From Podarcis pityusensis (taxonomy: Eukaryota), in NCBI GenBank assembly GCA_964106645.2, contig OZ067041.1: a stretch of 64,000 nucleotides of DNA, one strand, 5' to 3'. Position 1 is the stretch's first letter, and each line of letters begins with the position of its first letter. The notes beneath the pieces were generated by a model that was given only the letters and a program-made list of their open reading frames with translations, did no database searches and had not been told where the DNA came from. Shown piece by piece: positions 7,900 through 63,630 of this stretch. The position numbers and the translations under genes are program-made.

Positions 7900-8830
7900 T
7901 CAGCCTGCAATAAAGATCTGCGCTTACAGGGCTATTGCTAAGCAACTTTCGGGCACGGCAGGCACCTCCCACTTGGGCTTGGTAGTCATGCTATGTTAGA
8001 AAGATGAAATGTATTTCTACGCCGCCTTTCATTGAAATGAACGCTACTACCGTTGGCTTCTTAATGGACAAACCGCTGCTCAAACGCAGCTACATTAAAA
8101 CTTGGGCTTCCGCCAGCGCTTCCTGTGAGCGGTTCTTTCTGACTTCCTCCCTGGGAGGCTAAAATGGAGCTCAGAGCGAACCCGGAAACTTGGAACCTTT
8201 TGTCAGTCTACTAACGGGTGACTAAAAAAGCTTCTTGCAGAGACGGGGGGAAGTCTATGATCCCGTGCAGGCTACCGGAAGAGGTTTCTTTCCGGTCCGT
8301 CGCTGTCCTGGGATTGCTTCCGGTGCGGTGTCCGCCCCCAGCAATGGTGGCGGCAGCCCCAGCGACGGCGGCGCTCGGCGGCCGAAGAGGCGCGTTGTGA
8401 TCGCGGCTGCTTCTGCTTGCCCGCGAGGGAGAGCCGAGCCAGGCGAGGAAAGGACGCCGAAGACCCGCTCTTGTCGGCCGGCCGCCTAGTTTCGGTTTCC
8501 GCCGAGGCAACGATGGCGCCGGTGCAACTGGAAAGCCACCAGCTGGTCCCGGCGGGTGGAGGGCCCACCTCGGCCCCAGCTCCGCAGCCTCCGGGAACGG
8601 CGGCGGCGGCGGCCAGCGCCGGCTTCCGACTCAGCACCCTCATCGATTTCCTGCTGCATCGCACTTACGCGGAGCTCACCGTCCTGGCCGACCTGTGAGT
8701 GCCGGGGGGGGGGCTTGCCCACCTGCCTGCCTTGCCCACTTGCTTCCCCCCGCGAGACAGTTCACTCTCCGACGGACCCGTGTTAGGCGACCTTGGCTTA
8801 TGGAACGCCTCTTCCCCATTCGCCCAGGAG
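7900..8830. promoter_or_regulatory. CpG-island promoter of MED14 with clustered ETS/GABPA-type CCGGAA motifs
   Basis: High GC/CpG against AT-rich background; CCGGAA or TTCCGG near 8182, 8275, 8289 and 8318; overlaps exon 1. Confidence 0.8.
8513..8694 (+). CDS. MED14: MED14 exon 1 (coding part)
   Basis: acgATGg start; [10 protein letters not shown]...ELTVLADL; donor CT|gtgagt. Confidence 0.95.
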
Positions 8831-11800
8831 GTCCTCCTCCTTTGTGGCTTGTTCTACGTGATGGAGAAGGAGGGTGGTGGTTTGGGGAAGCCTGATCTTC
8901 TGGTTCAGTTAGAATCTTCAGACTCTCTTCGCGCGCTGTGACTCTTAGGTGACCTGCCTAAGAGTCATATGTACACCCCAAAATGTAAAGGCTGAATAGA
9001 GTTAAACAATCGTTCAAAAACTTGAGTGTCATACATACAAGTGCATTTGTTAAAGAGCTGGAATTGATTCCTGGTTGAGTTTATGTTTGCTGGCAAACCT
9101 AATAAGGGCATCAAGAAGATAAGGGCTAAGTCTTAAACTAAAACTTGTGTTTGCTTGATTGGAAATACTGAATAAAAAAATTCCTTCCAGTAGCACCTTA
9201 GAGACCAACTAAGTTTGTTATTGGTATGAACTTTCATGTGCATGCACACTAGGGTGTAGGTGACAAGGGTGCTGTGCTCCCAGCTGGATGCTGTATTTTA
9301 GTTTGAAGGGTAGCCTCCTTTCACTGTAAGTCATCTGGATGGTACAGACCATTTTGGTCCAGTGAAAGCTGTTTGTGTGTAGACTATTGAGGGACAGATA
9401 CCGTTGGAAGCAACCTATGTGTCTAGATTGCAGGAAGGCCTTTGCTGTCTTTGTATTAAACAGGTTTTTAAAAAGAAATTGTATTTATACTTTTCATGAA
9501 GTTTCTACAATCTCCTGTCACATAGCTGGAACTTCTGTGGTTGCTTTATTGTGGCCTTTTAAAATCACTTCCCGTTGTGGCTACATCTTTGCAACAAGCT
9601 ATTCATGGAACCATAGAATTGTAGAGTTGGAAGGGACCCCAAGGGTCTTCTAGTCCAACTCCCTGCAATGCTGGAATCTCAAATATTGTAAATGATGGAC
9701 AAAGCAGCAGACCCTCTGTGTGGTCTCTGGAGTATTTCTTGTAAGTAACAGCCCAGGTAATGAATAGAAGGTTGGTTGGATGAGATTTTTAAATAATAAA
9801 TAGCCTTATTGAAGTTAATAGCTTTACTATATTCACATCAACTACTTATTTAGTCTTTTTCAGGAATATGCTCAATTAGGTTCTTGGCTGTGAAAATCAG
9901 GATAAACCAATTCCTTTTTTTACATATGCATCCCCATATAAATTAGACCTATAGTCATATCTGCAAATCTTTTCAAACTTATTTGCATTTTAGTTAAGCT
10001 GCATTACTTTCAATGGGGCTAAATGGGTTCAAAATATGTTTACTCCACCTTAACTCGTTTGTGATTCATAGCACTAGCAATATAGGGCCCTCTACAAAAA
10101 TATATTTCAATCTACTTTAAGTGTGATATTGTTATCTTTTTTCTGTTAATGCTTTTGTGGAAATATAACAGACCCTTTTATTTACCTTAAGGTGGTGTGG
10201 ATAAATGCTCCCAGAATTTAAAAAAAAGTCAGTGTTGTAACTCAGCTTGTTTAAGCATCACAATAATACAGTGCTGTTAGTAATAGTAAAGACACAGGAC
10301 ATGGGGATCTGAAATTGAATGACTGCAAGTTCACGCTTTATGATGTCAGTCACTTGTATTTGCACTGGTGTTGGAAAAACTTTTGGGGAAATCATCATCT
10401 GTTTTCAGTTATTTGGACACATGATAGACATTTGTTTATTATCTGTGTGAAGAAGTTTGCAGTCACACACTGTAGGTATCTGCCTAAGATTTAAATGTAC
10501 ACCCCAAAATGTAAAATGTGAATGAGTTACAAGATTGTTTAAAAACTTGAGAATTGTACAAGAACTATTGTCAGAGAGCTGAAATTAACTCATGCTTCCT
10601 GTTTAATGTTTTTGTAGTATTTGTCAAAACATAATAATTTGATCTTTTTTTTTTCACCACTCCAACTCCCCTTCCCAACAGATTACCAAGAAAAACAGAT
10701 ATGGAAAGGTGAGTAATGACAATTGAGGAGGATTTGTAATAAATTTTAATGAAATTTAGGTATTGAATCACTGGGTCAAATATTTCCTTTCTTTAACTTT
10801 ACCTGAGTTAAAAATAATAATATAGTGTTTCAGTTTTATTAAGTGCCTAGTTTGAAATTCAAAACATTTTGGGATGGTTTACATGTAATGGCAACCATGA
10901 TTTGATGCCAGAAGAATGAGCCTTGTGGTTTTATTTCCCACCCCTGCCCAGCACTCTAACTGGATGAATTTCCTCTGTAGTACAGATCTAAACTGCATTC
11001 AGATCAGAAAACCATGGTTTGTGCTTTCCTCTAGATCAGGATTACTGGATTATGAAATGTTGTATGAGACTTCACACTATTGCAGAGGAAAAGTCTATAC
11101 CAATAAAGGATTAACATTTGTGTAATGTGGGTTTTCAAAAAAAAAATCCTATGTAACATTAGGATAGTTTGCACTGTAAAGTTTTCTAATGCAAATTAGG
11201 AGTCAGGTTTTCAAATAGAGAACCCATAAGTTTTATCCTCTTCAGATAGAGTTAGCAATTGATAGGAGATATTCGACTTGTTTGAGTATGGGTAGAATTA
11301 TGGCCTCATGCAGATCCTGCTTCAGAATAATTTCTGAATACTAAATGTTGGTCATGATGTGAAACCGTGGGGTTGCAAACCATGGTTTTTATTAACTGTA
11401 TATCAATGATATATCTGCACAGAGTATGGTTAGGAAAATTAATCCACCTCTCCAGCGTCTCCTTATAAGATAAGAAATAGGTATTGCTGGTGTCCCACTA
11501 TACACATCAGCTGAGGGCAGAACTAACTTTGCCAAACTAAACCATAATCTCTTGTACGTCTGACATGTTAACCATAGTTAAGTTTAGGTCAGCATTGGGT
11601 CGTGCAGCTCTCTGTGCCCATGTTCACTTGTATTCTTTGAGGATTTCTTCTAAAACTGTGAGCTTTGTAATGCATAGATATTTATCACACAGTTAAACCC
11701 TGTAGCAGTGTTCTGGCCTTTGCCTGAAGGTGTATAGGGTTAAATTGGGGCAGGACACAAAGTCGTCCCTCCAAAATTTCCAGGCTGTCACTGCTGATAC

Positions 11801-43046: not shown

Positions 43047-44499
43047 CTAGATTTAAAAAAATGTTTCTGTGTTTGCTTTAAAAATGTTTCATTTTTATAT
43101 GTGAAAAAAATAATGCCAGATTGCTTGCTTATGGGGCTGTTTCTGGGTAGTTCGTCACTGCCTTAAAAGCTCAACATACTCAGTGCACCAAATTTAGAAG
43201 TAGGAAATTGCCAGTTCCTTTTCAAGTACAGTGGTTTATTATCTCTAAAAGTTGGATTGAGCAAGCAGTAAGTGGTATGATTTTGCAGATCTTCATACCT
43301 GATTTAAGGCAAGTTCCTGAAGCACCCTGAAACAAGTTCAGTAGGCCTTTTGAGAGCAAGGGCGGCATTCTGTGCTGCACAGCAATTGACTTTGAAACTC
43401 AGGGATGCAGCAGAAGCAGTTTTTAATGGAGGGACTTACTTTCATGCATATGGAGAGGGAAAATGGGAAAGACTCAGTAAGTGTACCCAACTAAAGCAGT
43501 AGCTAAGGTTGTTCTCTGAATTCTGACTATTCTTCACATTGAAAGTGTTGCATGGAAGCAGCTTGAAACAGCCTCTGGGGAAAATCTCCCACTTGGCAGT
43601 TGTACCTTGTAGAGTAGCTTGCCACATGGAATGGCAACATTACATAGTCTTCCCCTGTTCACCAGTAGCTGCCACAGAGACAACTGGTGCTAGCATGGTG
43701 ATTCCACATGACAATCCCAAGTGGTAAGTTAATGCATGTTAAAAGATTCCCATGTGGTGCAGCTAGTAAGTGGGGGAAATTTGACAGCTTCCATATCAGT
43801 AAATATAGATGATCTAGGACACAAAACACTAGGACACTGAAGGAAACATGACAACTTTTATAAAGCGTGTATATGGAAGCTAAAGAAAATTGAACCTTGT
43901 TCAATATCAGTAATAACTGTATTTGGAGGTTACATTATAGCCATTAATAGGCAAAATATAGGTTAGCTCTGATTAAGATAATGCCCATCACCACATCTTG
44001 TGGCAGTGAATTCCATGAGTTAATTAGTACTTCCATTTATGCGGTTGGCCAGTCAATTCTGAGGGTAACTCATAAGTTATAATTCTTCCATTACATTTAT
44101 CCGAACCAGGAATACTTTATCAACTTTAATCTTGCTGCCATTTTGGGTTTGTCTTTTTTTCAATTGCCAATAGAAGCTTCCTCAGGAAGTTGGCGGTTTC
44201 TGGTATGTAACAGAATACTAGTGGCAAATGGTCTGACAAATACCTAAGAACATATCCTGAGAATATAGATCATATATTGAAATATATATATATAGGGTGC
44301 CATGGACTTTTCTGAGGAATCAAGAACTGTTTTAGGTCGAATTACCACTAAAAAAAGTAATACCACTGTTTGCTTTTCTGAATTTCATTTCCCACGGACC
44401 TCGCCTTTTACATTTCTCTCAAATTTCACACAACTGGCGGCGTGGACTGTACTCCACAAAATCTTATGCCATAATAAATTTGCTAGCCTTTAAGGTGAC

Positions 44500-44522
44500 T
44501 ATATATATATATATATATATAT
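44500..44522. repeat. (TA)n microsatellite
   Basis: Directly visible. Confidence 0.9.
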
Positions 44523-44749
44523 TGCAAAGGACTAAAAAGGCTACCATCTGGAAATTAACATAAGTGTACACTATTTTATTTATGAAGCTAACACTGCTGA
44601 GAAAAATATGTGTGCCCTTGGGTAGGGAGGGGTCAAGATTTTTCCTCGTTTTAAATAGTCAAAGTGTGGTTTCAAGGAAATCGATACCTACCTCTTGCAC
44701 CGTTGCTTAGGAAAGGGTCTGCAAGTGTGAACCTATAGCTGACAGGATG

Positions 44750-45530
44750 ACCTCGGGATGAGCGGCAGCTCCTGCCTGCGCTCCCCTGAGGCAACGAGCG
44801 ACAGAGGCCGGCCGGCTCCGCCGCCTCTAGCCCGGCCCCCTGGAGGCTGGCGCGCAAGGCGGCAGAGTCGGGCATGCCATGGCGCTGGCGGAACTGGCCT
44901 CTCGCCTCAACTGCGCCGAGTACAAGAACTGGGTGAAGGCCGGGCACAGCCTGCTGCTCTTGCGGGCCGCCCTGCAGCGCTTTGCCGGGGAGCAAGTGCA
45001 GGCCTTTCACCGCCAGCTCGTCGCGCGCTCCTCCGCGCGCCTCAGCCCGTCGGGCCTCCGCTGCCGCGGGCGCTGCACCCCTCGAGGCAAGCAGGTGAGG
45101 CTCCGCCCTGGGAAGCGGAGGTCGGAGGGGGCTCCTGCCTCGCTTGGCCTGGTCGCCCCTCTTCCGCCAAAAGCGCGTTCGAGAAACAAACACTCGCGCG
45201 TCGTTCACCCGACCCTTTCCGAAGTGCACGTGGCGCGCCCCAGAGGTCCCTTCAATGCCGGGGGGGGGGGGGACTACTTTTGCTCAATCAAAGAGGAGGG
45301 AACGATTTTGAACAGGAAAACAGGAGAAGGGGTCGCGCATCCCTCTTTTCTCGCGCGGAAAGATACGCGCCGCGCTCGTGGCAAGTTTCGGCCAGAACAA
45401 AGAACTCCGGCTTGTCTCGGATCTCGAGCGCTTTCTGTAAAACTGTTTCTTTCGAACAGTGCCCCCTTCTGCAAGCCGAGAGATTCCCTGCTTTATAATA
45501 CAGTACTGTACAGCATACTGCGCGTTTTCC
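44750..45530. promoter_or_regulatory. CpG-island promoter of CXorf38 orthologue
   Basis: Dense CpG stretch spanning exon 1 and the start of intron 1. Confidence 0.8.
44879..45094 (+). CDS. CXorf38: CXorf38 exon 1
   Basis: gccATGg; [22 protein letters not shown]...[11 protein letters not shown]; donor CAG|gtgagg. Confidence 0.94.
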
Positions 45531-48500
45531 TATCTTTTTGATGTATTATAATTTCATTTGTTTATATATAAGCTCAGGGGCAGCGCAACACGGCCAGTTC
45601 TCTCGCTTCTTTATTTTAATGTGGTTGCAGAACTTCTGTTATTTCATTGTGAAATACTGAAATATTTTCTTCTATTATAGTGAAGCAATAGCTGCAGTGA
45701 TGGCACCTGGCATCCTTGAGAAATTTGAAATGTTCAAGATGGTTGCCAAATTAGTTTTGATGTGAAGGAAGAAATCCCAAGAAATGCCATTAATTCTTAG
45801 ATTTTAAAAAAACATTAGGGATGCTAGTTACAAACATGAAGGATGCTGAGCAGTTTTATTTTTAGAGTGCCACTATGATGCACCTACAATCGTTAATAAA
45901 AATGCACAGTTGTTTCATGGTGCCAGTTTCACTTTTGCTTTGCAGCAGAGGGGAGGTGGGCAGAGGGTTGCTTTTCTGTTCCAGATTATGTAATCTCTCA
46001 TTGGATTTTCTCATTTGGGGTTTAAAATGTGTATTTGATGCCATTAGTAGCATGATGGCAGCCAAGCTTTGGAATGGTACATCAAACTAAATTCCACATC
46101 AAACTAGACATCCAGGTTTTAGCTTTTGGCACGCCATATATTTTGGGGCAAAATGTGCACCTTCAGTCGCAATCCTAAACATCATAGCTGATCGGGGAAT
46201 ATTATGTGTAGAACTGCTAATTACAGACCCCAAATGAAATCCTTACAAGGAACAATCTTAGAGGTTTTGAAGGCTTACAATGATGTTGCGTGCAGGCAAG
46301 ATAAGTGAGAATGATTAGAGAAGTCAGTGTGCAGCAGCTGATACAACATATTGCACTGATCGCATACATAGCAGTGAACTTTGTTCTGCAATCAAGGCTT
46401 CAAAGAGAAACAGTTTCACTAATGGAAGCAGGCCAGGATTTTCAAAACATCGTAATGAAGAGACCCTGCCCTCTCAGAGTACTTGCACAGAATTATTTGA
46501 ATCAGAACTTCTTACTTTAACATCTATGGATAGTTAATTTCATGTTTTGAAAAACTGCTGCTGGTGTGCTTTACTTAGCACCAGATTAAGATAATGACCA
46601 GGTACCACTATGAAGGTTGCAAAGAAAATTGCATAGAAGCCAAAGGTATGGAGTCCTGCCAAGAATGAAGCCCAACTGACGCTTTATAAAGATGTAGTTG
46701 AAGACAGCGTGACTCGCTGCTTTGAAATATTTCGGGAAATGATTATGCTTGTCACCAGAAAATGATTATTTCAAAGCACTGCAACAAAAGGGAGTCTCTA
46801 ATCCTGCCTGTTTTATTTATTTTTTATGTTGATTCCTACATACTTTCACTGCTCTTACCCTGTAAATGACGTGTGTGGAGTGCTTGTTTTCCTATATCTT
46901 TGAGACTTGAGTGGGAAGAGAATTTTGGAGGCGGGTCTTCCACTAAGAGACACACAAGTCGCCCAGATCTCAAAATATACTTGGTGGGCGGCATTTTCCA
47001 ATTCTTTTGCGAAGCTGCCAAACTAATTTGGCAGCCATCTCAATGATTTCAAATTGCTCAAGGGTGCCAGGATGTCACCACTCAAATTATTATTTCACAA
47101 AATGTTATAGCACAAAAATTATATTTAAAAAATGGGCAGGCAGCAGTTCACAGTTAAATAACTGAAGTTCCGAAACTGGACTATATAATCTTATGCTGTG
47201 CATCATCATGGCAGTTTGTTTGACAGTTTGTGTAAAATTTGTCAGTGATGCCAAAATGGCACCATTCGTATTTGAATTATAAAGAAAGCATCAGAAATGT
47301 TCTGGATAGATGGAAGTTTGTGGCTTTTTGCTTTGCTGCATGACTAACATGACTGGAAGAATTCAATCTGCACAACTTTTACCGTCACAGAATCTCCATG
47401 CTGGTGAAGGCTTCCCCTTTTTGAATTTTGGGGAATTTTCTGGCATGGGTTGAAATCGCTGGAACTACATAGGAACAGCCACTTTATGCAAATGCCTTGC
47501 CTCATGGAGCTGTCTCTGTGTATGTGGGCTTCATGTACCCACACATGGAGCTGCTTGCAGGCATGACTCAGCCACAATCAGAGCCATAGCTAGGTGATTT
47601 TGCGCCCCTGGAAGAACTGTCCAGATTGTGTCCCCTAAGGTAAAGGTAAAAGGACCCCTGACCATTAGGTCCAGTCGTGGCCAACTCTGGGGTTCTGGCG
47701 CTCATCTCGCTTTATTGGCTGGTCATGTGGCCAGAATGACTAAGCCGCTTCTGGCAAACCAGAGCAGCGCACAGAAACGCCGTGTACCTTCCCGCCGGAG
47801 TGGTACCTATTTATCTACTTGCACTGGCGTGCTTTCGAACTGCTAGGTTGGCAGGAGCAGGGACCGAGCAACGGGAGCTCACCCTGTCACGGGGATTCGA
47901 ACCACTGACCTTCTGATTGGCAAGTCCTAGGCTCTGTGGTTTAACCCACAGCGCCACCTATGTCCCCTAGCTCTTCTTTCTGCCCCTCCTCCAACCCCAA
48001 CCCCTTCCACCCTTTCAATTCACCATCTATTTAAAACCATTTCTTATGAGGCAATACACTAATCAATATTTATATTTATGGACATATTTTTAGCCGATTT
48101 TGTGCACCCCTCACCGCCTATGCCCCTGGCGAGGGCCCACCTCACCACACCCTAGCTACAGTCCTGGCCACAATAACAGCAGCAGAGGGTGCAGCCCAAC
48201 TTCTGTGATGCTTCAGATATCTTGCCTCACAGGAAAAAAGTTACGGGATATAAAATGATTCATTGACCACTCTTGTGGTACTTTTTGGAGCAGCTTGTGA
48301 TACTTAGGCCTGACTCTGCAGTACAGGACCATACTGAACAAAACATTTATTGACAACAAGGCTGACAATCCCAGGTTCTCATCATGTTTCAATCATGAGT
48401 AAAATTCACGGAATTGCTTCCTTGTGGGTTGGGAAGAAGTGGAATTGCCCAGAGGTCAATTTGGGTTTTGAAAATGAAGGATTCAGTGAGAATGTGTGAT

Positions 48501-51500: not shown

Positions 51501-54500
51501 CGTATTAGTGTTGCTGGGCCTTGTCAGAGAAAATAGTGCCTCCATTTCCTCCCATTCTCCCAAGGAAAGACAGAAAGCCCATGAAAACTGATGTGTGGTG
51601 ATCATACATGTATCTGTTTCACTGTGGCTTCCCACAGTGTAGGTGTGTGCTCTGGGAAACTGTGCCTCGTTGTGCCTCCCAAGATGTAGACATGCTGTGA
51701 AATAGACATCAGTACAATCAACATGTGATGAAAAGCATGTTGATGAGCTTTGCAAGGCAATACATCTCACCCTAAAAGTCTCACCTACAAGTTTGGTGCT
51801 TCATTATGGAAAGTGGAACTTGTTTTGGATTCAAGAGGGAGTGGCAGCCTAAGGCTGACTAACAGTAGCTGATCAGAAAAGTTCTAAATTGTGTCCTCCT
51901 GTATGGTGTGGAACAGTACGGAATGACTATGCAGGACTCCAGCGAGAGTATCCAATGGGATTGTAAAGAGAAAAAGGACAGCAACAAGATGTTAATTAAA
52001 CCACTGTTTTAGTGTTTGACAAAGCTACAATTAAATAAACATGAGTTCTGATATAACTATCAGTTAGAAATAGTGTGTTACTAATAGCTTCTGAATCAGA
52101 CATTAACTGCATGCGTTCTCCTTTGCTGTGTAGGCTTACATGCCTCGTGGGAAAGCAGACATTTGTGGTCCAGACAAATGTGATGCATCTGCACTCTTAA
52201 ACCTTTTCAACTTCTGCGATCACTTCAGTAACATCGATCAGAAGAAAGTCAGAGAGGTAATCCAACTACCGCTATTGACATCTTTTCTTAGCAGGGTTCC
52301 ACAAACACCCTCACCAGGTTGCAATCAGTGACTGCCTCTTCCATTTGGGCAAGCATCCTGTCCTGTCTACAGAGACCTCTATCCGCCTCACAGAGCTACA
52401 GTTCCCAGAGTTGTATAACAATAAATCCCAGAGAGCCAGTGTGGTGTAGTGGTTAAGAGCGGTAGACTCGTAATCTGGTGAACCGGGTTCGCGTCTCCGC
52501 TCCTCCACATGCAGCTGCTGGGTGACCTTGGGCTAGTCACACTTCTCTGAAGTCTCTCAGCCCCACTCACCTCACAGAGTGTTTGATGTGGGGGAGGAAG
52601 GGAAAGGAGAATGTTAGCCGCTTTGAGACTCCCTAGGGTAGTGATAAAGTGGGATATCAAATCCAAACTCCTCTTCTTCTTCTCTTCCCAAGAAATCTGG
52701 AAACTGTAGCTGTGTGAGGGGAGTAGGGGCCTCCTAACAGCTCTCAGCCCCCTTAACGAACTACGGTTCCTAAGATTATTTGAGGGAAGCCATAACTGTT
52801 TAAAGTGTTATGAGACTGCTTTAAACATATAGTGCAGATGGAGCTTAAATTGTGCATGCCTACAAGTATAAAATGCAATATAATAAAGTGCTTAAGGCTG
52901 GTTATCATATAGCAGCCTCTGAGGAGGAGACAGTCGAGGAACATAACATTGGCAAAGTGTTCGCCACACGGGGCATTTCCATTCTAGTAACAACAATATG
53001 TGGCTCTGATGTGAAAACAGATCACTCAGTCAGCAACCCCTAATGCAGGGCTGTAACTTGAGGGTTGGTTTTTGCTTACCATTGCCCTACACTGAGTTTT
53101 CAGTCTACTGGTTTTGCTTCATGTTTTTATCTCTAGGTGATTAAGTGCCGCAATGAACTAATGCATTCTTCAGATATGAAAGTCTCTTCTTCCTGGCTGG
53201 AAGAATTTGGGAATCATGTTCAGAACTTGCTAACTGAATTTCAACACATTCCAGAGGCCCAGACGGCTCGTACAAGGATAGAAAAGGTAATAGTTGCCAT
53301 TCTTTCAACTTGTAGGCTGGCTGCTATTCACCTTTTTTTATTTTAGCTAGGCACAGTATTGAATATAGAAATGCAACAGTCTGTATCCAGATGGTTTGCA
53401 CTCTAAATCAAAGCTTTTGTGCTTGATCAAGGATATCTGAGGCTGTTTCATAATTTGTTGATTCAAGGTTTTTGGGTACATTGATACAATTTAGTTTTAC
53501 TCTTGAGATTACCATATCAAAAGTTTATTTTTTGGGGGGAAACAAAACAAAACAATAGTACAGCATTTTATCTGCATGTTATATAGATGGAAAGGTAAAA
53601 CTTCTGTAAGGCAGATAGCCTTGCATGGAGGCAACAGGCATTATGCTATGTGGCATTTAAAAAAAAATAATAACTGGTTAAATAATGTACCTATGTGGGA
53701 GAACACAAAAGCCAGGATACAAAATCTATTTTGGGCCCACTACTGGAATAAAAAAAAATCTTTGTTCAGCAGACTTTTATGCTGTATCACATAACCTGCT
53801 TCTGAAACTTCCCATAGTTTCAAAACAGTTCATTTGTTTTAGAAAAGAATTTAAGTAAAAAGAGATTATTTAAAAATAGAATTAGTAAATGGCAGGGACA
53901 TTGCTGCAGAGGAATAGCCAAACCACCATTTTTAAAATTCTTTTAAAGAAGTTCATTACTATGCATACCTATCTGGAAATAAGTCCCATTGAAGTTTACT
54001 TCTGAGTAGACATGCATATGATTCCACTGGGAATTGTTTAAATGTGTTCTTTTGCAGTGAAGGTATAGACTCCAAATAATGTTTTTAAATCCACAGAATG
54101 CCAGTAAGTTTCACAAACTACAGTGGTACCTCAGTTTTCGAACGTAATCCATTCCGAAAGACCATTCGAGTTCTGAAATGTTAGAAAGCCTAAAACTCAA
54201 CAGCCGACAGCTAGGCCTCAGGATCTTGCACTCAGCAGAAGCATGTTTGAAAACCAAAGCATTTACTTCCAGGTTTATGGTGTTCGAAAACTGAAATGTT
54301 TATCAACAGAGATGTTCAAAAACCGAGGTGCCACTGTACTTGGCATACCTCAGTATTGTCAAATACTGTTGCTCATCTCTAATGTCACAAACAACATTGA
54401 CTGGATCCAAAGAAATGTGTAACTAGTTTCATCTGTATTTCTCAAACAGCATCTTGTGCTTTTGGGGCTATTGAAGCCCTTAAGTGTATTATTTTGTCAA

Positions 54501-57500: not shown

Positions 57501-58033
57501 GGCCCATCTAGTCCATCATCCTGTTCTCATTTCACATTTTTTACTCACAAGGTATTTCTCCCCTTCTTAGGATTTAAACAGAATACAAATTGTAAAGGAT
57601 TTCTTAAATGGCAACCATGATCTTCAAAGAAGTTTGCAGGCTGAAATGCAGAACCTAGAAGACCTCGTGCAAAAATTGTACGGCCAAAAACAATCCATGA
57701 AAGAAACCCAGGAAGTGAACGATGAGGAGACAGATGAAGGCAAGTGCATATGTTTAAAATGAAATTTGTGTTTTATCGCTCTAACAAGTCGCATAGCAAA
57801 ACTCACTGACACATTGTAAGGTGTTAGGAAAGAATACCACCTTAGGAAGGAATACCGCCTTACAGAAATCAGAATATGCAGCTTTGAGATTGCTTTTATT
57901 TGGATTGCCATGAGGCAGACCTTTGGTAAATAAGGCCAGGTGCTATTCTTAAGTATGCAAAATATGTAATGTTGTCTGTGCTTTTGTTTAATTTTTAGAT
58001 TGTCATTTAGAAAAAAGGAAGCGTACGATATGA
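44879..58033 (+). CDS. CXorf38: CXorf38 orthologue (DUF4559), whole gene span; 7 exons, about 331 aa
   Basis: [69 protein letters not shown] match vertebrate CXorf38; lies between MED14 and ATP6AP2 as in human. Confidence 0.93.
47579..48166. mobile_element. hAT-type non-autonomous element with 8-bp TSD
   Basis: Termini CAGAGCCATAGCTAGG...CCTAGCTACAGTCCTG; GCCACAAT at 47571-47578 and 48167-48174. Confidence 0.82.
47637..47966 (-). mobile_element. Sauria SINE (internal deletion) nested in a hAT MITE
   Basis: Same body as 18690-19046; B box GTTCGAATCC on minus. Confidence 0.88.
49308..49533. mobile_element. pogo/Tigger-like MITE, same family as 3229-3501
   Basis: ta|CAGTGGTACCTCGGGTTA...TAACCCGAGGTACCACTG|ta, perfect 18-bp TIR. 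Confidence 0.9.
50203..50337 (+). CDS. CXorf38: CXorf38 exon 2
   Basis: [45 protein letters not shown]; tag|...|gtaatg. Confidence 0.94.
50366..50953. mobile_element. hAT-type non-autonomous element with 8-bp TSD and nested LINE 3' fragment
   Basis: Termini CAGAGGCATAGG...CCTACACCCCTG; TATGTAAA at 50358-50365 and 50954-50961. Confidence 0.8.
52134..52256 (+). CDS. CXorf38: CXorf38 exon 3
   Basis: [41 protein letters not shown]; tag|...|gtaatc. Confidence 0.94.
52431..52686 (+). mobile_element. tRNA-derived SINE (Squam3-like) with (CTT)n tail
   Basis: A box TGGTGTAGTGG, B-box-like GGTTCGCGTCT, L2-like 3' end; interrupts an older element carrying CTACAGTTCCCAG motifs. Confidence 0.78.
53137..53286 (+). 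CDS. CXorf38: CXorf38 exon 4
   Basis: [24 protein letters not shown]...ARTRIEK; tag|...|gtaata. Confidence 0.94.
54121..54336. mobile_element. pogo/Tigger-like MITE, TA TSD
   Basis: ta|CAGTGGTACCTCAGTTTTCGAAC...GTTCAAAAACCGAGGTGCCACTG|ta. Confidence 0.85.
54550..54717 (+). CDS. CXorf38: CXorf38 exon 5
   Basis: [20 protein letters not shown]...[23 protein letters not shown]; tag|...|gtaacc. Confidence 0.92.
55285..55430 (-). mobile_element. SINE: tRNA-Asn-like head with CR1-type tail
   Basis: Minus strand GGTGGCGCAATGGGTCAG...AAGGATGGTGGTTCAAGCCCACCCAGGGAC resembles tRNA-Asn; same tail as 35891-36030. Confidence 0.72.
57571..57739 (+). CDS. CXorf38: CXorf38 exon 6
   Basis: [30 protein letters not shown]...NDEETDE; tag acceptor; probable GC donor AAG|gcaagt (read-through stops at 57762). 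Confidence 0.85.
57999..58033 (+). CDS. CXorf38: CXorf38 exon 7 (probable last coding exon)
   Basis: T-rich tract and tag acceptor; phase matches the GC donor; (D)[10 protein letters not shown]. Confidence 0.65.
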
Positions 58034-58508: not shown

Positions 58509-58866
58509 TTAATGCAAGTCCAAGACTCAAAATTTAAATTCTTCCAAGTTCACCATGAGCAAAATCATGTGAGGATTCTTTGTATTCATTAAATAAGTTA
58601 TTATAGTCCAGCAACAATGATCATTTACTACTGTGTCTTAATGTGCTCTTTCCTAAGTGTGAAGTGGGGGGGGGGGAATTAATACACGGAGCTCCAACTT
58701 AGGGAGTAGTTGCAGCAAGCCTGACAATTAATGTTTGTCAAATACTCTAAACCTGAAAGAAATTACTTGTAAGATAGGAAAAAATCCAGTAAAGGGGCCC
58801 TTTTCACAGCAACTGAACCTGGTAAACTCGAAAGAATTTAAATTTTGAGTCTTGGACTTGCATTAA
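58509..58866. repeat. 47-bp inverted repeat pair (outer 35 bp perfect), 264-nt spacer
   Basis: 58509-58555 is the reverse complement of 58820-58866 with 3 mismatches. Confidence 0.9.
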
Positions 58867-59144
58867 CCAAATTCCTGGGCAGAGGATCAGTAGCTGTGCA
58901 GGAACACGAAAACCACCGTGAGTTATTTCAGAAAATCATTCAGGTAAGCTGAATGCCTCTGGTGTAACTGCTGGCTTTTCTCAAGTGTAAAGGGGCTAGC
59001 GTAGGGTCTTGCTCTGTTCAGAAATTTAGGATTACATTTGAATGGCCAATATAGGACTTGCATGAGTTAGTATGTTAAACAGGAGAGCAGGAGTGAGTAC
59101 CCTCGCTGAAACTGCCTGCATATAAAGGCAGAAGAACGGTAATA

Positions 59145-59489
59145 CAGTGGTACCTCGCAAGACGAATGCCTCACAAGACGAAAAACTCGCAAGACGAAAG
59201 AGTTTTTCGTTTTTTGAGTTGCTTCGCAAGACGAATTTCCCTATGGGCTTGCTTCGCAAGACGAAAAACGAAAACGTCTTGCAAGTTTGTTTCCTTTTTC
59301 TTAAAACCGTTAATACCCAGGGTGACTTCGAGGAGCAACTCATAGCACGCGGTGTGGTAGCCTTTTTTGAGGTTTTTGAAGACTTTGGTGATTTTGAAGA
59401 CTTTGGGAAACCGTGCTTCGCAAGACGAAAAATTCGCAAGACGAAAAAACTCGCAGAACGAATTAATTTCGTCTTGCGAGGCACGACTG
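59145..59489. mobile_element. pogo/Tigger-like MITE with reiterated CGCAAGACGAA motif
   Basis: ta|CAGTGGTACCTCGCAAGACGAA...TTCGTCTTGCGAGGCACGACTG|ta. Confidence 0.88.
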
Positions 59490-60641
59490 TATGAAGAAAA
59501 AGCAGGTGCTTAAGTAATAAGCCATTAGAATAACACAAATCTTGACAAGCACAAACATTTATTCCATATAAATTAGGAGGAAAAACATTGTCCTCTAATG
59601 CACACATGATCCATTTAGGGGAGAGAATGTGCTTCAATACCTGTTTCATTATCTGTTAGAGGGATGCGGTTTAGAAGGCTGATGACAGACTCTCAAAAAT
59701 TCATCCAAATCCAAGGTTTGGTCGCTTCAACATACATAACAACGAACTGCCACACTGATACAACTGTATAACATGGCATTATTTGTTAGGATCATGTCCT
59801 ATTTGATATCTCAGGTAGGACTAGGTACAAAAATGGCCTTCTCTCAGCTGTCTCGGTAAAATCACCTGCGTTTTCAAAAGGCTTCTTGCATATATCACAG
59901 CTATAAACTACAAAATCCAGTGGTCTACTCAATGCCAGTAAAAAAAGAATGGAATAGTTTGATAGTGATGAACTTGTCCAATTGGTTCCAGTGGATAACT
60001 TACTCCAATTGTGAGTCAAAAGCCTTATGTTGTCCCAGACTATGAATTACTGGAGCCCAGTTAATAAATACAGGCTCCAGAATAGAACGAAAACTTGAAT
60101 CAGTTAACAGTTGATAAAGGGCACAAGAATGCTAATGGATTTAGATATGTCTAACTCTGTGCAGTTTTCATATTACATTACTAGGTAGTTTTAATTTTAG
60201 ATTTCATTTTAGGACTGATTTGTTAGTTTTAGGATTGAAAAACAGATGCTTGATCTAGTAATAGATCTGCTGATCTGCAACAGGACTGATCAATCTTTTA
60301 ACTTATATCAAGTGGCTTATGCACCTGGTAACCATTATAGCAGGTTTTTTAGACTGGAGGACACTTAAGTTAGAAAGTAAAAGTTTCATACAGAATCTTT
60401 GTATATAAAGAATAAGTACTCTAAAGCAGAAAACATTTATGTCTACTGCTAGAGATGGAAAGATTGCACTAAAACTGGAAGTAAAGTATTCTTCATATAT
60501 CGTTTTTGCAATTGTACATATAATTTCACCTCTAAAAATGGAATTCAAGCAGCTAGTTAATGTAATCTGGGAACACACACCTATCATGTTTAACCTCAAT
60601 TGGGTTGGAAGACACAGGCCACTTAACACATTTCAGTGTAC

Positions 60642-61497
60642 ATGTTGAAGACTCTGCCCTGACAGAGACTGGAAGAAGCTGCCATGAAGAAACCTGTTGC
60701 AAGATGTGACCAACACAGACTTTTTGTGACTGAAATTCTTGAAGAAGCCATCAATATTTTTAACAGCAGCTCTGATAGTGAACCCAGTTGATGCCAAAAA
60801 TACAAGTGCAGAAGAATCACTGGGGAAAAGGATAAAGCCGGGCAATGAAAAAGCATTTATAAGCAAGATCGACAGCACTCAGAAGATGACTTCTCATCGC
60901 AAAAGGAAAAGGGCTGTATCTTCTCAGTGCCCCGCTGACAAGGTGCTTGAGAAAAATCTGGTAGAGGACAAAGTTAAGAAGAAGTTGAAAGAACTTGAAG
61001 CTAATCACCAAAAAAAGAAGGTCATTTGTAGAGCTCTACAGCTGGAAAAGGTGAAGCGAAGGAAGGAAGAAGAGGCTGAACAACAAAGGAAACAAAACTG
61101 GAGGGGGGAAACAGCAGTTGGGAAAAAAGAGTCAGAAGTGTAAAGGTCACCTTCGCAAGGCGCTGCAGGCTTGGGAGCAGATGGAAGAAGAGAACACAGC
61201 TTGAGCAAAAGCTTGCTCAGCAAGTTGGAGAAGCATGGAGAAGAAATCTACTAATACCAACAGCCATACACCCATAATAAACACTACTTGACACTAGTGT
61301 AGTATTTGAGATTGTGAAAAGTCCTCAGTTGGAAGAAATCTTCAACAGCAAGCCATGCTACTTCAAACACAACTGTCCTATAGCGCAGAACTCTCCACCA
61401 CACCCAGGTGGCAAAACATGCTCGAGAGAGAGACCACCTAGATCTCGTGTATCTGGTGTTTTTGTGCATGACAATTTTTTGTCGCTTTAAAAAATAT
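60642..61497 (+). pseudogene. INCENP: Intronless, internally deleted INCENP-like (inner centromere protein) pseudogene or retrocopy
   Basis: Across frameshifts: LQDVTNTDFL*L/EILEEAINIFNSSSDSEP/LMPKIQVQKN (N-terminal domain), LEKVKRRKEEEAEQQRKQ/HLRKALQAWEQMEEE/LEQKLAQ (SAH helix), AWRRNLLIPTAIHP**TLLDTSVVFEIVKSPQLEEIFNSKPCYFKHNCPIAQNSPP (IN-box); several stops and frameshifts. Confidence 0.8.
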
Positions 61498-61651
61498 GTT
61501 TGAAGATCCATTATTGGTTAAAACTGATTTTCTTCCTGGTAGGTCTGGCACTCTTAACTTTAATAGTTACATGCCAAACAAAATGGAAATCTTCACTGCA
61601 AGAGAAACTGAGAAGCCAAGGGTTCGCACCTCAGGCTCTGATACCCTGTGG

Positions 61652-61741
61652 CATAGCTGTCAACTTTTCCCTTTTCTTGCGAGGAATCCTATTCGGAATA
61701 TGGGAATTTCCCTTAAAAAAAGGGAAATGTTGACAGCTATG
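61652..61741. mobile_element. 90-bp hAT-type MITE with 8-bp TSD
   Basis: Perfect TIR CATAGCTGTCAAC/GTTGACAGCTATG; CCCTGTGG at 61644-61651 and 61742-61749. Confidence 0.9.
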
Positions 61742-61849
61742 CCCTGTGGATATGAGAAAACCAAATCCACAATTAAGCAATGAATCTTGGATGCTTATTT
61801 GCAATGCCATGTGCATGAAATGGCCAGGTATCCAGAAATTAAAGGTAAT

Positions 61850-62390
61850 GGGAGGGGGTTTACTCCAGCGAGGTATTTATCCAAGCTAGAAAAACCCAAA
61901 TTTAGATGATCGTTTACCCTTGCCAGGCTCAATGTCCTACCATCTGCATTACTGCAGGCTGATTTGAAGGTAAAACATTCAGAGAGAATATGCCGATGTG
62001 GTTTGAAGGAAGTTGAAGCTGTTACTCATGTCCTACAATACTGTCATTATTATAGGGACATATGTTCTATATTTATCACTCCAATCATGCAGCGAATCCC
62101 AAGCAGATCTGATGACCACTACTTCAAATATCTAATAGAGGAAAGTGGCTAAATTCTGTGCTGCTGCTGCTATAAAATTAAAGAGACAAGCTCTGAATGA
62201 ATTTAATGGCCAATGTCTTTAACACACGTATTTTAAAATGGCAGTTAAGGTTTTAGCCTACATATTTCAATTGTTTTATATCTGTATTATTTATCGTGTT
62301 CTAGCTTATAGAGTTTAAATTTATTTATATTTACATGTTCTCTATTGCTGTATATGTCTGCATTTCTGGTCTGTGACTGTAATAAATCAA
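61850..62390 (+). mobile_element. RTE-X-like LINE 3' fragment (ORF2 CCHC knuckle and 3' UTR)
   Basis: SFTLARLNVLPSALL...ERICRCGLKEVEAVTHVLQYCHYYRD; 3' end GGTCTGTGACTGTAATAAA. Confidence 0.75.
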
Positions 62391-62814
62391 TTTAAAGCTG
62401 CTCTCCTTGAAAGGAGAACCAACCCAGAAGATCCTGGACCCCCTCCCCACTGATTTACAGCCAGTAGGTTGGCCCCCACCACAAAATCACACCTCTCCAC
62501 TCTGTCTTGCACTGGTGGTTAACTCAGGAGGTTAAGAGGGATAAAAAGCACCAGGCCAATGTGAACGGTTTTTTTTGGATGGGGGGTTAGGAAGAAGGGT
62601 GGCAGTGTGCAGTTTTTATATTCATCTAGTAGTTAGTGAATGGCAGCATTGCTTTATTGTTTGTATATTGCTTACATTTCTACCGCTATGTGTTGAGCTG
62701 CTGTATTGTTTTTGTTCCCAATAGGAATAAGAATAGGCTGTATTTACATATTTGCGGTCATTGCAGTTGCACTAAACCAACCCTTGTTTTCAACCTCTGA
62801 CACAATCCATGACA

Positions 62815-63435: not shown

Positions 63436-63630
63436 TTAATCCATCCTAATCTTCTGGTTTGTCATTCTATAAATGATGCTGTCGTAGCCTGGATCCATAT
63501 TCCAGAGGTTGTAGGAGATGACTATCACAGCTATGGTAAGGGCTATCATCATCCAGAAGACTATGTTGAAGACCACAGCATAGTTAAAGTTGTATTCATA
63601 TCCTAAATTATATGGATTTTCATCTTTGGG
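63436..63630 (-). CDS. ATP6AP2: ATP6AP2 ((pro)renin receptor) last coding exon; the rest of the gene lies beyond the window
   Basis: [64 protein letters not shown]: TM helix and cytosolic tail; AG acceptor at 63631-63632. Confidence 0.97.

What the first reader, a model, noticed from the sequence alone, without database searches (positions are those of the whole stretch)
60642..61497. Hidden, compacted INCENP-derived pseudogene between CXorf38 and ATP6AP2
Seen: about 0.85 kb with no evident introns. Read across frameshifts it gives LQDVTNTDFL*L-EILEEAINIFNSSSDSEP-LMPKIQVQKN (60697-60815), K/E-rich helices (60937-61225) and AWRRNLLIPTAIHP**TLLDTSVVFEIVKSPQLEEIFNSKPCYFKHNCPIAQNSPP (61233-61400), ending in RFKKY. 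Known: these match the Survivin/Borealin-binding N-terminus (DLVWLEEIQEEA...EPELMPKTPSQKN), the SAH helix and the Aurora-B-activating IN-box (AW..GN.L.QAI..QYY...SPKLE.IF.KSKPRYFKRTSSAVWNSPP) of vertebrate INCENP. Inference: a retrocopy that kept the three functional modules, lost most of the disordered middle, and has lost the TSS phospho-motif. It may be the relic of a once-functional mini-INCENP paralogue. The ORF track shows only a fragment of it.
Basis: partly seen in the sequence, partly recalled or inferred. Interest (0 to 1): 0.82.

Follow-up and report, generated by a model that had tools for sequence, protein, structure and literature searches.

The report
Dead, scrambled INCENP retrocopy in lizard
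An 0.85 kb stretch between two lizard genes is most likely the decayed, shortened, intron-free copy of the cell-division gene INCENP, an ordinary dead pseudogene with no sign that it ever worked as a "mini" version of the protein.

Summary
They need at least five frame changes and five in-frame stops to read through.

[quoted passage not shown] Its stop-free piece (61281-61487) hit nothing but INCENP chains among solved structures (E 0.06, per-target 4e-7). That alignment also shows the TSSxxW activation motif replaced.
- **INCENP tie, not shown:** the N-terminal and K/E-rich parts gave no hit in Pfam, PDB, the word search or the 1.84-billion-protein HMMER search. Their INCENP likeness rests on memory.
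- **Other species:** four related species carry the relic at about 95-99% identity. They differ by +4, +1 and -3 letter indels. The window species also has a private deletion of about 379 bp at the relic's stop codon.
- **Second locus:** another single-copy locus in these genomes joins two relic segments in the opposite order and in one open frame. It is probably the parent gene, so the relic looks rearranged as well as shortened.

Verdict: an old processed INCENP pseudogene. The "once-functional mini-INCENP" idea is unsupported. Interest is low.

The parts
60688..60729 (+). Frame-1 piece (RNLLQDVTNTDFL) ending in TGA. It may be the start of the N-terminal CPC-binding helix. The same bases read in frame 3 give an alternative (..CDQHRLFV..), so the ancestral frame here is ambiguous.
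   Evidence: sequence. The likeness to INCENP is recalled from memory only. No database hit.
60732..60791 (+). Frame-3 piece (EILEEAINIF...SEPS) ending in TGA. It resembles the INCENP N-terminal helix that binds Survivin and Borealin.
   Evidence: Pfam and PDB searches of 60663-60788 found no INCENP. Untested lead.
60782..60832 (+). Frame-2 piece (..LMPKIQVQKNHWGKG), the continuation of the N-terminal module after a frameshift.
   Evidence: At 17 residues it is too short for the search tools.
60730..61143 (+). Longest open piece: 137 codons in frame 1, closed by TAA at 61141-61143. The first ~29 codons are out of frame with the N-terminal module. A basic Ser/Arg/Lys-rich stretch follows, then K/E-rich helix-like sequence from 60937.
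   Evidence: No hit in Pfam, PDB, the word search, the 1.84e9-protein HMMER search or the Atlas.
60936..60984 (+). Segment Y (DKVLEKNLVEDKVKKK, frame 1). It is matched at 85% or more by a contig from a second locus in organisms B, C and E.
   Evidence: joints 61222->60936 and 61222->60941, with extra depth in bins 60861-61054. for the translation.
61175..61222 (+). Segment X (..KRTQLEQKLAQ, frame 3). In the second locus it lies directly before Y, 12 letters apart, in one open frame. In the relic it lies 287 nt after the start of Y, in another frame.
   Evidence: joints, table 5c, depth bin 61152-61248; the composite reads open over 36 codons.
61230..61280 (+). Frame-3 piece (EAWRRNLLIPTAIHP) followed by two stop codons, TAA TAA. 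It is the putative first half of the IN-box and runs on from segment X in the same frame.
   Evidence: No PDB or Pfam hit on its own.
61281..61400 (+). Second half of the IN-box (..SPQLEEIFNSKPCYFK..NSPP, frame 3). The TSSxxW motif is replaced by NCPIAQ.
   Evidence: all four PDB matches are INCENP. 4c2w_C has E 0.061, conditional 4.1e-07; human 9si3_N aligns at residues 872-907.
61384..61503 (+). Frame-1 tail ending ..RFKKYV and TGA (61501-61503), the putative C-terminus. All four other species break at 61499/61500, and organism D carries 379 extra letters there.
   Evidence: table 8: X15 record 13, X11 records 2 and 3, X7 record 24, X17 record 17.

Best explanation
This is a dead processed pseudogene of INCENP, the scaffold of the chromosomal passenger complex. 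It lies on the + strand in the gap between the convergent genes CXorf38 and ATP6AP2 of a lizard; an earlier scan note says Podarcis.

An INCENP mRNA was reverse-transcribed and inserted without a promoter. The copy never needed to work and has decayed. It now carries at least five in-frame stops and at least five frame changes. It has lost about two thirds of the coding length, namely most of the disordered middle and most of the single alpha-helix region. It has also lost the TSSxxW activation motif.

The shortening came from internal deletions and at least one rearrangement. These arose either by template switching during reverse transcription in the purine-rich repetitive helix region, or by later duplication and deletion. 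Deletion is still going on, as the private loss of about 379 bp in the window species shows.

**Shown:** the sequence and its breaks, IN-box similarity, loss of TSSxxW, presence in five related species with non-triplet indels, and a second locus with the other segment order.

**Inferred:** retroposition as the origin, the identity of the second locus as the parent gene, and the mechanism of compaction.
For: - Translations and breaks are as described.
- The IN-box half hits only INCENP in PDB. The same alignment shows KHNCPIAQ in place of KRTSSAVW.
- Parts that lie far apart in human INCENP sit within 0.85 kb with no introns. Human layout: N-terminal domain 1-47, SAH 528-791, IN-box 835-903 (PMC11116813).
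- The locus is single-copy. It is present in organisms B, C, D and E at about 99.3, 98.9, 96.5 and 95.4% identity, with +GGGG after 61102 (D, E), +T after 61228 (D, E) and -3 at 60881 (D).
- In organism C the relic has 9 differences in 862 nt, against 15 in 987 nt of flank. That shows no excess conservation.
- A 379-letter difference sits at 61499/61500.
- The second locus joins X and Y in one open frame.
- No CpG island or promoter-like composition at the relic.
- No other copy in the window.
Against: - Only one of the three modules has database support, and that at E 0.06.
- Pfam's INCENP models did not fire on any piece.
- No poly(A) tract or convincing target-site duplication was found. 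The 32-nt direct repeat at 60158 and 62606, 78% identical, is probably chance.
- The letters of the second-locus contigs could not be read, so its identity as INCENP rests on my recalled INCENP sequence.
- The X-to-IN-box junction is in frame. A once-selected short ORF would also predict that, although chance gives it one time in three.
Confidence: 0.8

Rival explanations
1. Relic of a retrogene that once worked as a shortened INCENP (N-terminal CPC-binding helix, short helix, IN-box) in an ancestral lizard and died later.
For: - Only the parts that resemble the functional modules are recognisable.
- The junction between segment X and the IN-box is in frame.
- A 137-codon open piece survives.
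Against: - Segment order is scrambled relative to the second locus, and the segments lie in different frames.
- TSSxxW is gone.
- Relatives differ by non-triplet indels, and conservation is no higher than in the flanks.
- No related intact protein turned up in the word search or in 1.84e9 proteins. Those searches could only see close relatives of the middle piece.
- The modules are also the only parts a reader can recognise from memory, because the rest of INCENP evolves fast.
Confidence: 0.05
2. Chance resemblance: purine-rich, K/E-coding non-coding DNA with a fortuitous IN-box-like peptide next to it.
For: - The best E-value is only 0.06.
- An unrelated piece reached E 0.02 against designed repeat proteins.
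- Every other search was blank.
Against: - The target was named before the search, and the per-target probability is about 4e-7.
- All four hits are INCENP, and they align at the correct C-terminal place, with NSPP at the right distance.
- A second single-copy locus shares two of the K/E segments in one open frame.
Confidence: 0.07
3. INCENP fragments brought in or shuffled by a mobile element (transduction or capture), or by DNA-level duplication of a cDNA-like copy from another pseudogene, rather than by direct retroposition at this site.
For: - The relic is flanked by mobile elements: inverted-repeat elements at 59142-59492 and 61650-61743, and a multi-copy LINE-like fragment around 61800-62400.
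- The segment order is permuted.
- No poly(A) tract or target-site duplication.
Against: - Depth over 60600-61500 is single-copy in all DNA runs.
- The flanking elements are separate insertions. The 61629-61759 element is absent at this site in organism D.
Confidence: 0.06

Closest known systems
Vertebrate INCENP (inner centromere protein), the probable parent gene
   Same: - IN-box-like C-terminal peptide aligned to Xenopus and human INCENP.
- An N-terminal helix-like peptide, a K/E-rich helix-like middle and a similar C-terminal end, in the same overall order as the domain map in PMC11116813.
   Different: - About 285 codons instead of about 900.
- No open reading frame.
- TSSxxW is replaced. 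That motif, with R891, S893, S894 and W897, is needed for full Aurora B/C activation (PMC6639382).
- The HP1-binding disordered region and most of the SAH are missing.
- Two helix segments are permuted.
- It is not a member of the family as a gene, only a derivative of it.
Processed pseudogenes (retrocopies) with internal deletions or rearrangements
   Same: - Intronless, promoterless, disabled and single-copy.
- Evolves like its flanks.
- Lies in an unrelated intergenic or 3'-flank position.
- Earlier notes report other retrocopies in this genome (s1-716477, s1-716481; unchecked).
   Different: - No recognisable poly(A) tail or target-site duplication remains.
- Unusually heavy internal loss and a permuted segment order.
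Engineered shortened INCENP constructs used in cell biology (SAH or coiled-coil deletions, N-terminus fused to the IN-box)
   Same: On paper, the same idea of an N-terminal module plus a short linker plus an IN-box.
   Different: - Those constructs are intact laboratory ORFs with a working TSS motif. This natural copy is broken everywhere and lacks the motif.
- The resemblance is one of layout only, and my knowledge of the constructs is from memory.

Membership tests
INCENP (functional gene family) | C-terminal IN-box that binds Aurora B (Pfam INCENP_ARK-bind) | tested here: inconclusive
   PDB phmmer on 61281-61487 found only INCENP chains, at E 0.061-5.2 with a conditional E of 4.1e-07. Pfam gave no hit on either half. 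The domain is split by TAATAA at 61275-61280. This is enough to call it INCENP-derived, but not to call it a domain.
INCENP (functional gene family) | TSSxxW phospho-activation motif with the preceding Arg (human R891, S893, S894, W897; PMC6639382) | tested here: not met
   In the alignment to human 9si3_N the relic reads KHNCPIAQ opposite KRTSSAVW. Thr, both Ser, Trp and the Arg are all replaced.
INCENP (functional gene family) | N-terminal helix binding Survivin and Borealin (human 1-47; Pfam INCENP_N) | tested here: inconclusive
   No Pfam or PDB hit for 60663-60788. The likeness is spread over three frames, each piece is too short to score, and it is recalled from memory.
INCENP (functional gene family) | Long single alpha-helix (SAH) domain (human 528-791) | tested here: inconclusive
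   A K/E-rich stretch of about 95 codons (purine fraction 0.70). No hits. Indirect support comes from a second locus that shares X and Y in one frame.
INCENP (functional gene family) | Intact open reading frame | tested here: not met
   Stops at 60727, 60789, 61141, 61202 and 61275-61280, plus at least five frame changes along the reading path.
Processed pseudogene | Parts that are far apart in the parent protein, and encoded by separate exons, lie contiguous without introns | tested here: met
   N-terminal-like, helix-like and IN-box-like parts lie within 60688-61503 with no intervening sequence. That the parent is multi-exonic is general knowledge, not tested here.
Processed pseudogene | Poly(A) remnant and target-site duplication | tested here: not met
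   No A-rich tract downstream and no convincing flanking direct repeat. The 3' flank is disturbed by a deletion and by mobile-element insertions. Absence is expected for an old copy and does not exclude retroposition.
Processed pseudogene | No coding constraint | tested here: met
   +4, +1 and -3 indels among close relatives. Divergence in the relic is 9 in 862 nt, not lower than the flanks at 15 in 987 nt, in organism C. Numbers are small and no dN/dS was possible.
Processed pseudogene | A separate parent gene elsewhere in the genome | tested here: inconclusive
   Contigs from a second locus at about single-copy depth in three species join X and Y in one open frame. The locus itself could not be fetched or read.

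The most novel reading that the evidence does not exclude
The copy was for a time a working, much shortened INCENP paralogue in an ancestor of these lizards. [quoted passage not shown] That would be a natural experiment on how little of INCENP suffices.
Probability: 0.04. Interest if true: 0.5.

Novelty: new member of a known kind. Interest (0 to 1): 0.12.

Why it matters
It matters little.

- **Annotation:** it is an unannotated-looking INCENP pseudogene. It should not be called as a gene, and its 134-codon ORF is not a protein.
- **Mechanism:** it is a small illustration of how a retrocopy in a lizard genome is whittled down by deletion and rearrangement, with one deletion caught as a difference between sister species.
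- **What would raise its value:** only an intact orthologue under purifying selection in other squamates would bear on INCENP biology.

Tried and rejected
**Searches that gave nothing**
- Pfam on five stop-free pieces: no INCENP family.
- PDB phmmer on the N-terminal piece, the 137-aa piece, the first IN-box half and the frame-2 K/E piece: nothing, or unrelated hits to bacterioferritin and designed PPR repeats.
- Word-index protein search on 61281-61487 and 60730-61140: no candidates, or none at E <= 1.
- HMMER search of 1.84e9 representatives with 60730-61140: 0 hits at E <= 0.001.
- ESM Atlas on two pieces: no usable hit.
- Rfam on the whole window: nothing.
- blastn of the relic against the window: no second copy.
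- Self-alignment of the K/E region: no internal repeat.
- Literature search for INCENP together with retrocopy, retrogene or processed pseudogene: no paper holding both.

**Steps that failed or were left out**
The frameshift-aware alignment, a read-through of the IN-box across its two stops, and any dN/dS were therefore left out.
- The CXorf38 exons were checked one by one. The joined spliced model was not built or searched.

- The stretch laid with reads (59600-62500) was kept clear of both neighbours' coding exons.

**Rejected idea**
- The 32-nt direct repeats at 60158 and 62606 as a target-site duplication: too long, only 78% alike, and no poly(A) before the second copy.

Full report
**What is in the sequence.**

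- Frame 1 gives RNLLQDVTNTDFL (60688-60726), closed by TGA.
- Frame 3 gives ..EILEEAINIF...SEPS (to 60788), closed by TGA.
- Frame 2 gives ..LMPKIQVQKN.. (60782-60832).
- Frame 1 then stays open for 137 codons (60730-61140, closed by TAA). It first codes a basic Ser/Arg/Lys-rich stretch and, from 60937, K/E-rich helix-like sequence.
- Frame 2 carries ..HLRKALQAWEQMEEE.. to a TGA at 61202.
- Frame 3 carries ..KRTQLEQKLAQQVGEAWRRNLLIPTAIHP (to 61274), then TAA TAA.
- Frame 3 continues with ..SPQLEEIFNSKPCYFK...NSPP (61281-61400).
- Frame 1 ends with ..RFKKYV and TGA (61501-61503).

Reading it as one protein needs at least five frame changes and passes at least five stops. The purine fraction of 60930-61230 is 0.70. 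There are no N runs in the window, and CpG is depleted here (o/e 0.25).

**Context.**

- CXorf38 lies on the + strand. Exon 1 from 44879, an exon at 53137-53343 and the last coding exon 57571-57759 each match Pfam DUF4559 at the expected profile positions, the last one at 256-301 of 305. I checked these exons one by one and did not build or search a joined model.
- The last coding exon of ATP6AP2 lies on the - strand, with its stop at 63436-63438.
- The relic therefore sits in the tail-to-tail gap. It is 2.9 kb after the CXorf38 stop on the same strand, and 1.9 kb beyond the ATP6AP2 stop on the opposite strand.
- It is flanked by mobile-element debris:
  - inverted-repeat elements at 58509-58866, 59142-59492 and 61650-61743;
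  - a multi-copy LINE-like fragment around 61800-62400.

**Is it INCENP?**

The only piece that a database search ties to INCENP is 61281-61487. Against all PDB sequences its four matches are all INCENP:

- Xenopus INCENP A 4c2w_C, E 0.061, conditional 4.1e-07, 14 identities over 26 columns through SP.LEE.FN.SKP.YFK;
- 5eyk_C, E 0.072;
- human 9si3_N, residues 872-907, including NSPP at the right distance;
- 9n9f_S.

E near 0.06 is weak by itself, and one search shows that an unrelated E of 0.02 can occur. Here, however, the target was predicted before the search, so the per-target figure is the relevant one.

Everything else was blank:

- Pfam on five pieces;
- PDB on the N-terminal piece, the 137-aa piece and the first IN-box half;
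- the word-index search;
- the 1.84-billion-protein HMMER search with the 137-aa piece;
- the Atlas.

The pieces are short, K/E-biased or split by frameshifts, so these blanks are not strong evidence against the reading. They do mean that the N-terminal and helix assignments rest on recalled INCENP sequence, which is a lead and not a test. The frameshift-aware alignment was therefore left out.

**Loss of the activation motif.**

In the alignment the relic reads KHNCPIAQ where human INCENP reads KRTSSAVW. PMC6639382 defines the motif as TSSxxW. S893, S894, W897 and R891 make the activating contacts, and all of them are replaced here.

**Other species.**

The stretch is held by the source organism A and by four further organisms. 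An earlier scan note calls this genome a Balearic wall lizard, Podarcis (s1-716477; not checked by me). Contigs of one run each of B, C, D and E were laid on 59600-62500.

- The relic is present and single-copy in all four, at about 99.3, 98.9, 96.5 and 95.4% identity.
- Indels inside the relic are not multiples of three:
  - +GGGG after 61102 (D, E);
  - +T after 61228 (D, E);
  - -3 at 60881 (D).
- In organism C the relic has 9 differences in 862 nt, against 15 in 987 nt of flank. There is no sign of extra conservation, though the numbers are small.
- All four species break at 61499/61500. One contig of D carries 379 extra letters there, so the window species has a private deletion of about 0.38 kb exactly at the relic's stop codon. 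An independent sample of organism A holds all sampled words across that junction (X1), so this is not an assembly slip.
- The inverted-repeat element at 61629-61759 is absent at this site in D.

**A second locus and a scrambled order.**

In B, C and E a further contig, at about single-copy depth, matches 61175-61222 and then goes back to 60936 or 60941 and on to about 60984. In E there are 12 letters between the two parts (tables 2, 5, 5c).

- Read with the window's own letters, this gives one open frame of 36 codons..KRTQLEQKLAQ-HEEKN-DKVLEKNLVEDKVKKK.
- So elsewhere in these genomes the two segments are adjacent, in the order X then Y, and in one frame.
- In the relic, Y comes first, X comes 287 nt later, and they lie in different frames.
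- From memory, the X-Y reading is collinear with the start of the vertebrate INCENP SAH region. The second locus is therefore probably the parent gene, but I could not read its letters.
- The relic is therefore rearranged as well as shortened. The alternative is that the parent has an internal repeat. I could not decide between the two (note 2).

**How it most likely arose.**

- A reverse-transcribed INCENP mRNA was inserted here.
- Large internal losses and the permutation arose in one of two ways:
  - by template jumps of the reverse transcriptase in the repetitive purine-rich helix region;
  - or by later duplication and deletion.
- Point mutations, small indels and further deletions have followed, and are still visible between sister species.
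- The in-frame junction of X with the IN-box (frame 3, 61176-61274) is the one feature a formerly selected short ORF would predict, but chance gives it one time in three.

**Transcription.**

Two small runs guessed to be RNA (D, E) have contigs over the whole laid stretch, with uneven depth. In E the depth is about 80 over 61700-62400, 44 at 61540-61636 and 10 over the relic. An ATTAAA on the - strand lies at 61559.

This fits the relic lying just beyond, or in a distal extension of, the ATP6AP2 3' UTR, antisense to it. It could equally lie in a long CXorf38 3' UTR. Contigs show neither strand nor ends, so this is unresolved. RNA coverage here would not show that the relic itself is expressed.

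**Verdict.**

This is an ordinary, old processed pseudogene of INCENP, heavily deleted and apparently rearranged. The INCENP origin is likely (about 0.8-0.9), though formally shown only for the IN-box. The 'once-functional mini-INCENP' reading has no support (about 0.04-0.05).

Noticed in passing
window 61499-61503: All four related species break at 61499/61500. One contig of organism D carries 379 extra letters there. This is a private deletion of about 0.38 kb in the window species, confirmed by an independent sample of the same species that holds the junction words.
   Followed up: partly
window 61629-61759 (inverted repeat arms 61650-61687 / 61706-61743): A small hairpin (MITE-like) element of extremely high copy number; summed contig depth reaches about 6e5 in the DNA runs. 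It is absent at this site in organism D, so the insertion is young or was excised.
   Followed up: partly
window 58509-58866 and 59142-59492: Two more inverted-repeat elements. One has 47-nt arms 94% complementary. The other has 25-nt arms with internal 16-17-nt TCGCAAGACGAAA repeats. Both lie in the probable CXorf38 3' UTR region.
   Followed up: no
window 61800-62400 (ORF 61964-62152): A multi-copy LINE-like fragment on the + strand with a Cys/His-rich C-terminal ORF. Depth is raised 5-30 fold in the DNA runs. No Pfam hit.
   Followed up: partly
window 44000-46000 and 8000-10000: Two CpG islands (o/e 0.82 and 0.71). The first covers CXorf38 exon 1 (ORF from 44879, DUF4559 positions 1-54). 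The gene at the second was not identified.
   Followed up: partly
window 59600-62500: Contigs of two small runs guessed to be RNA cover the whole CXorf38-ATP6AP2 gap with stepwise depth. This suggests long or overlapping convergent 3' UTRs. A minus-strand ATTAAA at 61559 coincides with a drop in depth in organism E.
   Followed up: partly
window 60158-60189 and 62606-62637: A 32-nt direct repeat, 78% identical, brackets the relic and the downstream mobile elements. It is probably chance, and there is no poly(A) before the second copy.
   Followed up: partly
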